64,000 bases of DNA, from assembly GCA_053919585.1 (NCBI GenBank), contig CM132796.1. One strand, written 5' to 3'. Within the stretch, counting starts at the first letter, position 1. Each line of letters begins with the position of its first letter. The notes beneath the pieces are model-generated. The model saw nothing but the letters and a program-made list of their open reading frames with translations. It was not told the DNA's origin and ran no database searches. The position numbers and the translations under genes are program-made. Shown in pieces: positions 45,820 to 46,135 of this stretch. The DNA comes from Euprymna scolopes (lineage: Eukaryota).

Positions 45820-46132
45820 ATATATTTAAGCCCTCCCTCTTTGGGTAGAGCACGGTCGTAAATACTCTCACCCGCTACTTAATTGGGTGAAAAATGCGAA
45901 GCTCGTTGTTTGTTTACAAACAGGCGGTTTGAGCACTGTAAGAGTGGTGGCGGATGTCTATTTAAATAGACATTCCGACGAGTTATTTGCGGGTGTCCCT
46001 TCTGTGGTCGAGTGGGAGAACTGCCGCCTGTCAACACGACGTTTCTAGGTTCAATTTTTTGCTTGGAGAGATGCTAGTCTAGCGGCACTGATGAGTTGTG
46101 ATACAACGAAACAGGACTGTATGTCGATGACT

Positions 46133-46135
<3 letters not shown>
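45820..46135 (+). mobile_element. Candidate hammerhead-containing non-autonomous element (retrozyme-like monomer)
   Basis: Non-coding segment, GC-richer than its flanks, with several inverted repeats. Ends in a hammerhead ribozyme; bounded by an N-gap upstream and (TA)n downstream. Confidence 0.55.
46075..46133 (+). ncRNA. Type I hammerhead ribozyme
   Basis: Stem I UAGUC/GACUA plus CGGCA/UGUCG around an internal loop. Core CUGAUGA at 46088-46094. Stem II GUUGU/ACAAC. GAAA at 46108-46111. Stem III CA(G)/(C)UG. Cleavage triplet GUA at 46119-46121. Confidence 0.9.

What the first reader, a model, noticed from the sequence alone, without database searches (positions are those of the whole stretch)
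45820..46135. Candidate retrozyme: ~315-bp highly self-complementary non-coding unit ending in a hammerhead
Seen in the sequence: perfect 20-bp palindrome atgtctatttaaatagacat (45954-45973); acaggcgg 45920-45927 / ccgcctgt 46024-46031; gcgaagctcgttg 45896-45908 / cgacgagttatttgc 45976-45990; tcaccc/gggtga 45868-45890; tgtttg/caaaca 45907-45922; cacccgc 45869-45875 / gcgggtg 45989-45995. Some of these are mutually exclusive, implying alternative folds. Established knowledge: metazoan non-LTR retrozymes are few-hundred-bp tandem repeats with type I hammerheads that yield circular RNAs and are thought to use Penelope-like machinery. Inference: this is a monomer of such a family, and the upstream 177-N gap could hide the preceding hammerhead or further units. 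Two Penelope-like relics in this window show that a potential helper family exists in the genome.
Basis: partly seen in the sequence, partly recalled or inferred. Interest (0 to 1): 0.78.

Follow-up and report, generated by a model that had tools for sequence, protein, structure and literature searches.

The report
Hammerhead-tailed short retroelement copy in cephalopod
This 316-bp stretch is one decayed copy of a roughly 2,800-copy, non-coding jumping element that ends in an intact-looking self-cutting hammerhead RNA motif and lands in TA repeats; it is a new family of a known kind (retrozyme or SMalpha-like element), and no circular or cut RNA was seen.

Summary
All listed complementary segments and the hammerhead are at the stated coordinates, and the predicted cleavage site is 46121/46122. 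Three of the six pairings depend on substitutions private to this copy, so they are not family features.

The unit is not single-copy and not a pseudo-LTR. A 30-mer from it occurs 2,840 times in the 5.9-Gb genome (reversed control 0). In 69 loci read, copies lie on many chromosomes between (TA)n tracts. None has Penelope coding sequence beside it.

- **Fixed 3' end:** it lies 14 or more nt past the cleavage site, and its exact position shifts with the target repeat.
- **Variable 5' end:** copies span 0.6 to 1.96 units, with 27 of 52 longer copies starting inside the preceding hammerhead or unit junction.
- **Inverted partners:** a few copies have a head-to-head partner.

These are Penelope-type scars. 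Intact RT + GIY-YIG Penelope elements that also end in (TA)n are abundant, but the ones read share no sequence with the unit.

Sister families at 71-83% identity keep the hammerhead helices, the palindromic hairpin and an anticodon-like stem through compensatory changes.

PolyA RNA-seq shows weak two-strand coverage and no read ends at the cleavage site, so a circular RNA is unproven.

This scan has already met hammerhead-tailed elements in (TA)n repeatedly in this genome. Verdict: a new member of a known kind.

The parts
45820..46135 (+). One full unit of the repeat family (family period 322-323 bp). About 18 substitutions or indels are private to this copy.
   Evidence: 94% identical full-length copies on more than 25 contigs. 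Private differences listed.
45643..45819 (.). N gap abutting the first base of the unit. The 5' boundary of this insertion cannot be observed.
   Evidence: Deliberately not filled or inferred.
45907..45922 (+). Small hairpin TGTTTGT/ACAAACA. The family has 4 more nt here.
   Evidence: Kept in sister families (columns 101-122).
45931..45950 (+). GAGCACTGTAA..GTGGTGG block, the best conserved stretch outside the ribozyme. A second GAGCAC(T/G)GT lies at 45848-45856.
   Evidence: Alignment with sister families at 71-83% identity.
45954..45973 (+). 20-bp palindrome forming a conserved hairpin.
   Evidence: A 30-mer containing it has 2,840 genomic hits against 0 for the reversed control. Two stem pairs change on both sides in sister families (pairs 154-165 and 155-164).
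46005..46015 (+). Box A-like motif TGGTCGAGTGG of a possible tRNA-derived module spanning about 45998-46071.
   Evidence: Sequence. No tRNA was called by ARAGORN or Rfam.
46025..46045 (+). Anticodon-like arm: 7-bp stem with the 7-nt loop CAACACG. This copy's stem is damaged by private changes at 46027 and 46042.
   Evidence: pairs 223-241, where 227-237 changes GC to AU in two sister families. Private changes.
46048..46057 (+). Box B / T-loop-like motif. The family reads GGTTCAATCC; this copy is mutated to ggttcaattt.
   Evidence: A sister family has the canonical GGTTCGATCC at the same place (L080 minus strand; loose ends).
46075..46133 (+). Type I hammerhead ribozyme motif. Predicted cleavage between 46121 and 46122.
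   Evidence: In one search, 96.7% of cells are paired against 53% or less when partners are slid, with compensatory changes in helix I and helix II.
46134..46180 (.). 3' terminus of the element (caa) merging into (AT)22, the target microsatellite.
   Evidence: The same junction is seen in most of 69 loci.

Best explanation
The segment is one old, neutral insertion of a non-autonomous, non-coding retroelement family of about 2,800 or more copies. It belongs to the hammerhead-bearing class known as non-LTR retrozymes or SMalpha-like SINEs.

Each 322-323-nt unit has three parts: a structured body with conserved hairpins, a degenerate tRNA-like module, and a type I hammerhead 14 nt from the 3' end.

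Inferred mechanism: an RNA slightly longer than one unit is copied into DNA at a nick in a (TA)n microsatellite, less often a (CA)n one, by the reverse transcriptase and GIY-YIG endonuclease of a Penelope-like element. The AU-rich 3' tail of that RNA (ACUACAAAUAUAU) lies beyond the last hammerhead. The nicked repeat pairs with this tail and primes synthesis.

Copying often ends inside the preceding hammerhead or unit junction. That leaves one unit plus a 0-47-nt tail, or a longer partial unit, the equivalent of a Penelope pseudo-LTR.

**Shown:** family size, dispersal, architecture, target, conserved RNA structures, and the presence of intact (TA)n-targeting Penelope elements.

**Inferred:** the helper, the priming mode, ribozyme activity, and any circular RNA. 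Copies with two hammerheads (about 15%) could release a 322-nt RNA that a tRNA ligase could circularise, but nothing here shows that this happens.
For: - **Copy number and dispersal:** 3,305 first-look candidates, with full-length copies at 92-94% identity on many contigs. A unit-specific 30-mer has 2,840 hits against 0 for the control.
- **Architecture in 69 loci:** the layout is (AT)n, then a 5'-truncated partial unit, then the unit, then (AT)n.
  - The 3' end is always ...GATGACTAC(AAATAT).
  - That junction slides to ...ACTACA|(CA)n in L082, L093 and L098.
  - 17 of 40 unbiased copies are shorter than one unit.
  - 27 of 52 longer copies start within U276-U6, against 8.7 expected (p = 6e-9).
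  - Inverted head-to-head partners occur in L090 and L096; inverted copies of related families lie beside L005, L080 and L084.
- **Match to published Penelope scars:** these features fit the pseudo-LTR, the 30-40-bp tail, the inverted 5'-truncated copy and the (TA)n bias described for Penelope-like elements (PMC8557442).
- **Helper candidates:** 15,396 GIY-YIG candidates with open frames up to 870 aa. One was confirmed as RVT_1 plus a C-terminal GIY-YIG. That element ends in (AT)n and has a minimal hammerhead-like motif in its 3' UTR.
- **Hammerhead:** complete core, three helices, two compensatory pairs.
- **Whole-unit homologues:** at 71-83% identity, 9 predicted pairs are kept by double changes.
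- **Non-coding:** no ORF above 53 aa lies inside the unit. No Penelope coding sequence is found next to 69 copies.
- **Literature:** metazoan retrozymes and their Penelope origin are described in PMC7229834 and 10.64898/2026.07.22.740005.
Against: - The unit shares no sequence with the 3' 1.4 kb of 30 Penelope loci, so the actual helper is unidentified.
- No target-site duplication can be read inside microsatellites.
- PolyA RNA-seq gives only low, two-strand coverage, consistent with passive co-transcription, and no pile-up of read ends at the cleavage site.
- Rfam scores the hammerhead well below threshold.
- Only about 3 of 52 5' ends coincide exactly with the nucleotide after the cleavage site; several include bases upstream of it. 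The scars therefore do not prove self-cleavage.
- Only 69 of about 2,800 copies were read. 29 of those were chosen by score.
Confidence: 0.72

Rival explanations
1. Classical retrozyme cycle. Double hammerhead cleavage releases a 322-323-nt RNA, a tRNA ligase circularises it, and the circle is the template. The (TA)n nick primes on the AUAUAU of the junction, and rolling-circle reverse transcription yields copies longer than one unit.
For: - The 3' end is fixed at an internal AU-rich site beyond the cleavage site, and copies exceed one unit although almost no genomic source is longer than two units.
- The monomer folds better than shuffles, with mean z = -2.5 as a circle.
- A chimera sits exactly at the cleavage sites of two families (L096).
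- The published model for metazoan retrozymes is of this kind (PMC7229834).
Against: - The length distribution has a sharp mode at 1.0-1.17 units and drops steeply beyond 1.6, with none above 2 units in 69 copies. It is not the smooth decay expected from rolling-circle copying.
- Only 15% of copies have two complete hammerheads.
- No ends at the cleavage site appear in RNA reads, although polyA libraries would lose circles.
Confidence: 0.27
2. SINE driven by RNA polymerase III. The tRNA-like module (box A 46005-15, box B 46048-57) is an internal promoter. The hammerhead serves only as the 3' module recognised by a Penelope reverse transcriptase, and no circle is involved.
For: - Box A- and box B-like motifs lie 32 nt apart, and an anticodon-like arm is kept by covariation.
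- A sister family has the canonical GGTTCGATCC before the same ribozyme, and unrelated hammerhead families in the same loci carry GGTTCGAATCC or a similar T-loop-like motif (loose ends).
- The family has TTTT right after the 3' terminus at unit junctions.
- 5' ends of long copies become rare upstream of about U130-180, close to where such a promoter would start transcription.
- SMalpha is described as SINE-like (PMC8490949).
Against: - ARAGORN and the Rfam tRNA model find nothing, even at E of 10 or less, in family or sister copies.
- The promoter lies in the 3' half of the unit. A transcript that includes the always-present body must read through the junction TTTT.
- There is no sharp 5' end at a single start site.
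Confidence: 0.3
3. The segment is simply a pseudo-LTR or terminal fragment of an autonomous Penelope-like element.
For: - Penelope pseudo-LTRs carry hammerheads, and retrozymes are related to them.
- Two units lie 2.6 kb apart in the same orientation at G000:C12:20154675 and 20157265. This pair could not be fetched.
Against: - None of 69 loci has RT or EN coding sequence beside the unit.
- Insertions are 0.2-0.63 kb between microsatellite flanks.
- There is no similarity to 30 Penelope loci.
Confidence: 0.03
4. Ordinary satellite or segmental duplicate in which a hammerhead-like motif arose by chance.
For: Rfam scores are sub-threshold.
Against: - Copies are dispersed with unrelated flanks, 5' truncation and a fixed 3' end.
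- The motif has the full core and is kept, with compensatory changes, in diverged sister families.
Confidence: 0.01

Closest known systems
Metazoan non-LTR retrozymes (Cervera & de la Pena 2020, PMC7229834; Li, Clavereau & Pollet 2026 preprint, 10.64898/2026.07.22.740005)
   Same: Non-coding unit of about 320 bp (published range 150-450), GC of about 45%, and a type I hammerhead once per unit. Units are arranged head to tail, the predicted RNA is structured, and the family co-occurs with Penelope-like elements.
   Different: This family forms dispersed insertions of 0.6-1.96 units rather than arrays running from dimers to large multimers. Insertion into (TA)n or (CA)n is strict, with a sliding 3' junction. 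There is a tRNA-like module before the ribozyme. No circular RNA has been demonstrated.
SMalpha / Sjalpha SINE-like retroposons of schistosomes (Ferbeyre et al. 1998 and Laha et al. 2000, as cited in PMC8490949)
   Same: Unit of about 335 bp, SINE-like, high copy number, with a type I hammerhead that has an internal loop in helix I.
   Different: There is no sequence relationship, the phylum differs, and the hammerhead here is untested.
Pseudo-LTRs and tails of EN+ Penelope-like elements (Craig et al. 2021, PMC8557442; Cervera & de la Pena 2014, PMC4209133)
   Same: Partial tandem duplication, a short terminal extension, an occasional inverted 5'-truncated partner, a microsatellite target, and a hammerhead near the 3' end.
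   Different: There is no ORF. Helix III is 3 bp with a non-palindromic loop, unlike the minimal dimeric Penelope hammerhead seen in this genome's dominant Penelope element (AACGTT). The unit shares no sequence with the Penelope copies read.
Other hammerhead-tailed short elements already noted by this scan in the same genome
   Same: Hammerhead tail, tRNA-type motifs, (TA)n insertion, Penelope-type scars, and a GAGCACT motif after the ribozyme.
   Different: This is a distinct family. Its direct partial-tandem form is much commoner than the head-to-head form, and a 178-nt structured body precedes the tRNA-like part.

Membership tests
Hammerhead ribozyme, type I | Conserved core CUGANGA ... GAAA and a cleavable H17 after a GU | tested here: met
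   CTGATGA at 46088-94, GAAA at 46108-11, GTA ending at 46121. Invariant in 23 aligned copies.
Hammerhead ribozyme, type I | Three helices around the core, with helix I open-ended | tested here: met
   18 pairs, 96.7% of cells paired, 53% or less when partners are slid. Helix I pair 13-54 changes GC to CG and helix II pair 25-35 changes UA to CG in a sister family.
Hammerhead ribozyme, type I | Score above the curated Rfam threshold | tested here: not met
   The best clan hit is Hammerhead_3 at 18.9 bits against a gathering score of 48.5.
Hammerhead ribozyme, type I | Self-cleavage at the predicted site | tested here: inconclusive
   No excess of read ends at the site in two polyA RNA-seq runs. 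Genomic 5' ends cluster around the site, with 12 of 52 in U300-317, but only about 3 are exact.
Metazoan non-LTR retrozyme | Non-coding unit of 150-450 bp carrying one type I hammerhead | tested here: met
   Period of 322-323 bp. No ORF above 53 aa inside the unit.
Metazoan non-LTR retrozyme | Head-to-tail tandem copies, so that two ribozymes flank a monomer | tested here: inconclusive
   Partial tandems are the rule, but only 6 of 40 unbiased copies have two whole hammerheads. The maximum is 1.96 units. The window copy's upstream side is N.
Metazoan non-LTR retrozyme | Expressed as a monomeric circular RNA | tested here: inconclusive
   Only polyA or oligo-dT libraries were available. Coverage was low and on both strands.
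Metazoan non-LTR retrozyme | Dispersed multicopy family co-occurring with Penelope-like elements | tested here: met
   2,840 hits of a unit 30-mer. RVT_1 plus GIY-YIG elements are abundant.
Pseudo-LTR of an autonomous Penelope-like element | The unit bounds an RT + GIY-YIG open reading frame | tested here: not met
   No genuine Penelope protein match in 181 kb around 69 copies. No unit similarity in 30 Penelope loci.
tRNA-derived SINE | Recognisable tRNA-derived head with A and B boxes | tested here: inconclusive
   Box A- and box B-like motifs and a covarying anticodon-like arm are present. No tRNA was called by ARAGORN or Rfam. The module is not at the 5' end of the unit.
tRNA-derived SINE | Transcription by RNA polymerase III | not testable with these tools
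   Needs Pol III ChIP, inhibitor treatment or 5'-end mapping.

The most novel reading that the evidence does not exclude
The insertion scars are a fossil record of ribozyme-processed RNA. Templates would begin at or near the upstream hammerhead cleavage site. Different hammerhead families would exchange modules by joining cleaved RNA ends, as in the L096 chimera, which sits exactly at two cleavage sites. A telomerase-related Penelope enzyme would choose its start by pairing the microsatellite nick with the RNA tail. Together these would give in-genome evidence for in vivo hammerhead cleavage and ligation, and for RNA-level modular evolution of retrozymes in a cephalopod.
Probability: 0.2. Interest if true: 0.6.

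Novelty: new member of a known kind. Interest (0 to 1): 0.35.

Why it matters
- **A new host group in the papers searched.** It adds a cephalopod family, with unusually legible insertion scars, to the small set of animal hammerhead retroelements. None of the 32 papers found by the one cephalopod search, 12 of them listed, appeared from title or abstract to describe such a family.
- **Support for a Penelope link.** The fixed 3' end beyond the cleavage site, the junction that slides with the target repeat, and the clustering of 5' ends in the preceding ribozyme constrain how such elements are copied. They support the view that retrozymes are riders on Penelope-like elements.
- **No new biology on its own.** For this window it is an ordinary decayed repeat copy with no sign of host function.

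Tried and rejected
- **Rfam at gathering thresholds:** no ribozyme hit, only a 5S rRNA elsewhere in the window.
- **tRNA detection:** ARAGORN and the Rfam tRNA model found nothing in the window, in family copies or in sister families.
- **Sequence link to Penelope elements:** none between the unit and 30 Penelope loci. Apparent tblastn hits of L035 frames in family loci are low-complexity matches on both strands.
- **Penelope relics in this window:** none found by tblastn with 12 Penelope frames at E of 1e-3 or less. The two ORFs of 150 aa or more have no Pfam family.
- **RNA reads:**
  - There is no cleavage-site pile-up.
  - The 'goes back 323' joint only reflects the permuted reference, so it says nothing about circles.
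  - The 3- to 5-fold higher depth over the ribozyme and box B comes from other families sharing that module.
- **5' ends as proof of cleavage:** rejected as proof, because many ends include bases upstream of the site.
- **Larger sample:** The 5'-end statistics therefore rest on 69 loci.

Full report
**1. What is in the window**

The 316 bases at 45820-46135 lie between a 177-N gap and an (AT)22 tract.

The 3' end carries a complete type I hammerhead:
- an outer helix I (46075-79 with 46129-33) and an inner helix I (46083-87 with 46122-26), separated by a small internal loop
- CUGAUGA at 46088-94
- a 5-bp helix II at 46095-46107
- GAAA, then a 3-bp helix III with a 4-nt loop at 46111-46120
- A17 at 46121

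Rfam finds nothing at gathering thresholds, and only an 18.9-bit Hammerhead_3 match at permissive settings. No ORF above 53 aa lies within the unit.

**2. It is a large dispersed family**

Searching the window's own 5.9-Gb assembly gave 3,305 first-look candidates. Every scored full-length match was 92-94% identical and lay on a different large contig. A unit-specific 30-mer containing the palindrome occurs 2,840 times with up to 2 mismatches, against 0 for the reversed control.

Copies are about 95% identical to one another. The window copy has about 18 private changes. 46027 and 46042 degrade a stem that the family conserves.

**3. Architecture**

I read 29 high-scoring loci and 40 loci taken in list order from the 30-mer hits. 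The second set is unbiased for insertion structure.

- **Layout.** The typical insertion is (AT)n, then a 5'-truncated partial unit, then one unit, then (AT)n. The family period is 322-323 bp.
- **3' end.** It is always ...GATGACTAC(AAATAT), which is 14 or more nt beyond the cleavage site. Its exact position follows the target repeat: ...ACTACA|(CA)n in L082, L093 and L098, and ...ACTA|(TA)n or ...AAATATAT|(AT)n elsewhere.
- **Length, unbiased set.** 17 copies are shorter than one unit, 14 are 0.97-1.17 units, 8 are 1.17-1.65 units, and one is 1.96 units.
- **5' ends.** Among 52 copies of about one unit or more, 27 start between U276 and U6, inside the preceding hammerhead or the junction. That compares with 8.7 expected (p = 6e-9).
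- **Sub-clusters.** These lie at U276-286 (8 copies), U300-317 (12 copies) and flush at the unit boundary (7 copies).
- **Relation to the cleavage site.** Only about three starts fall exactly on the nucleotide after the cleavage site (L093, L015, L013). Several include bases upstream of it.
- **Two hammerheads.** Six of 40 copies have two whole hammerheads around a full unit.
- **Inverted copies.** L090 and L096 have an inverted head-to-head partner of this family; inverted copies of related families lie beside L005, L080 and L084.

None of the 69 loci has Penelope coding sequence in its flanks.

**4. Reading of the scars**

The following are hallmarks of target-primed reverse transcription:
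- a fixed 3' end
- variable 5' truncation
- dispersal
- a microsatellite target

Three further features match the insertion anatomy published for EN+ Penelope-like elements (PMC8557442):
- partial tandems
- a short tail
- inverted partners

Because the 3' end lies past the cleavage site, the template cannot have been a monomer cut at both ribozymes. It was either an RNA left uncut at its 3' hammerhead, or a circle primed internally at the AU-rich junction.

The sharp mode at 1.0-1.17 units, and the steep drop beyond about 1.6 units, favour a linear template slightly longer than one unit over free rolling-circle copying. The sample is small, so this is a preference and not a proof.

The sliding 3' junction suggests that the nicked repeat pairs with the RNA tail to prime synthesis.

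**5. Helper**

The genome has 15,396 first-look GIY-YIG candidates with open frames up to 870 aa. One frame was confirmed as RVT_1 followed by GIY-YIG, the canonical Penelope layout.

Copies of this dominant element also end in (AT)n. They carry a minimal hammerhead-like motif with a palindromic AACGTT helix III about 100 nt from the 3' end. The unit shares no detectable sequence with 30 such loci. A helper class is therefore present and has the same target preference, but the specific partner is unknown.

**6. Conserved RNA features**

*Hammerhead.* Aligning 23 hammerheads, including a sister family, gives 96.7% of cells paired, against 53% or less when partners are slid. Compensatory changes occur in helix I and helix II. 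The sister family's helix III loop, CAGUACUG, is palindromic. This family's CAGGACUG is not.

*Whole unit.* Homologues at 71-83% identity (L080, L084, L005) preserve four features:
- the small GTTTGT hairpin
- the 20-bp palindromic hairpin, with two pairs changed on both sides
- a GAGCACTGTAA block
- a 7-bp stem with a 7-nt loop between box A-like and box B-like motifs

*tRNA-like module.* That last region resembles a degenerate tRNA. A sister family has the canonical GGTTCGATCC before the same ribozyme, and unrelated hammerhead families in the same loci carry GGTTCGAATCC or a similar T-loop-like motif (loose ends). No tRNA detector calls it. Its role as a Pol III promoter therefore remains a hypothesis. 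The family has TTTT at unit junctions; the window copy has TTTA.

*Folding.* Natural monomers fold moderately better than shuffles: z = -3.9 for L026 as a linear RNA, and a mean of -2.5 for 13 monomers folded as circles.

**7. RNA evidence**

Six runs on record as RNA hold parts of the family as contigs. Reads from two raw polyA runs, and contigs from two others, were laid on a circularly permuted monomer.

- Depth over the body was low and on both strands, with opposite strand bias in the two samples.
- Depth over the ribozyme and box B was 3- to 5-fold higher. Loose ends show that other families sharing the module explain this.
- No accumulation of molecule ends appeared at the cleavage site.

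This neither supports nor excludes cleavage and circles, because polyA selection removes such RNAs.

**8. Comparison and novelty**

The element works like, and fits most defining features of, metazoan non-LTR retrozymes (PMC7229834; 10.64898/2026.07.22.740005). It also resembles the SMalpha SINE-like hammerhead elements of schistosomes (PMC8490949).

It differs in three ways:
- it forms dispersed insertions of about one unit rather than arrays
- it targets microsatellites strictly
- it has a tRNA-like module

The one cephalopod search held 32 papers; the 12 listed showed, by title and abstract, no cephalopod family of this kind.

Earlier notes of this scan had already described hammerhead-tailed, tRNA-headed elements in (TA)n in this same genome several times. 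My data agree with them independently. It is a new member of a known kind.

**9. Limits**

- The N gap was left untouched.
- 60 more loci could not be fetched.

Noticed in passing
L096:1125-1187 (G000:C4:135361003-135363032): This family's unit stops exactly at its predicted cleavage site (...GGACTGTA). It then continues with the post-cleavage sequence of a different hammerhead family (GCTTAATCGCC...), which is seen intact in L064, L074, L079 and L018. This could be a join of two cleaved RNAs, or a template switch on the shared TGTA.
   Followed up: partly
window 46173-46289; window 28354-28470; L026:2461-2577: 5S-rRNA-like sequences. The window has a good 5S gene or pseudogene (81.5 bits), and a weak 5S-like stretch (22.8 bits) directly after the (AT)22 that follows the unit. 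Another lies near the L026 copy (41.8 bits). This is possibly a 5S-derived repeat family that also sits at TA repeats.
   Followed up: no
L050, L045, L038 (3' flanks of the RT + GIY-YIG frame): The dominant, apparently intact Penelope-like element ends in (AT)n in L050 and L038. It carries a minimal hammerhead-like motif (TGAAGA ... GAAAC) with a palindromic AACGTT helix III, plus two long A-runs in its 3' UTR.
   Followed up: partly
L063, L068, L085, L091: Four of 40 unbiased copies have deletions inside the terminal hammerhead, from near CTGATGAG to TATGTCG or GACTA.
   Followed up: no
L064:793, L074:67 (minus), L079:727, L018:1206, L076:753, L046:968 (minus), L073:1304 (minus), L060:681: At least five other hammerhead-bearing short families occur by chance within 260 kb of fetched flanks. 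Many sit next to (TA)n, and some have a T-loop-like GGTTCGAATCC about 20 nt before the ribozyme.
   Followed up: partly
G000:C12:20154675 and 20157265: Two exact copies of the unit 30-mer lie 2.6 kb apart in the same orientation. This pair is worth checking for an internal RT/EN frame, which would mark a possible parent element. It could not be fetched.
   Followed up: no
window 45848-45856 and 45931-45939: The motif GAGCAC(T/G)GT occurs twice in the unit. The first copy lies about 28 nt after the unit junction. It matches the GAGCACT signal that earlier notes of this scan place downstream of hammerheads in other families.
   Followed up: partly
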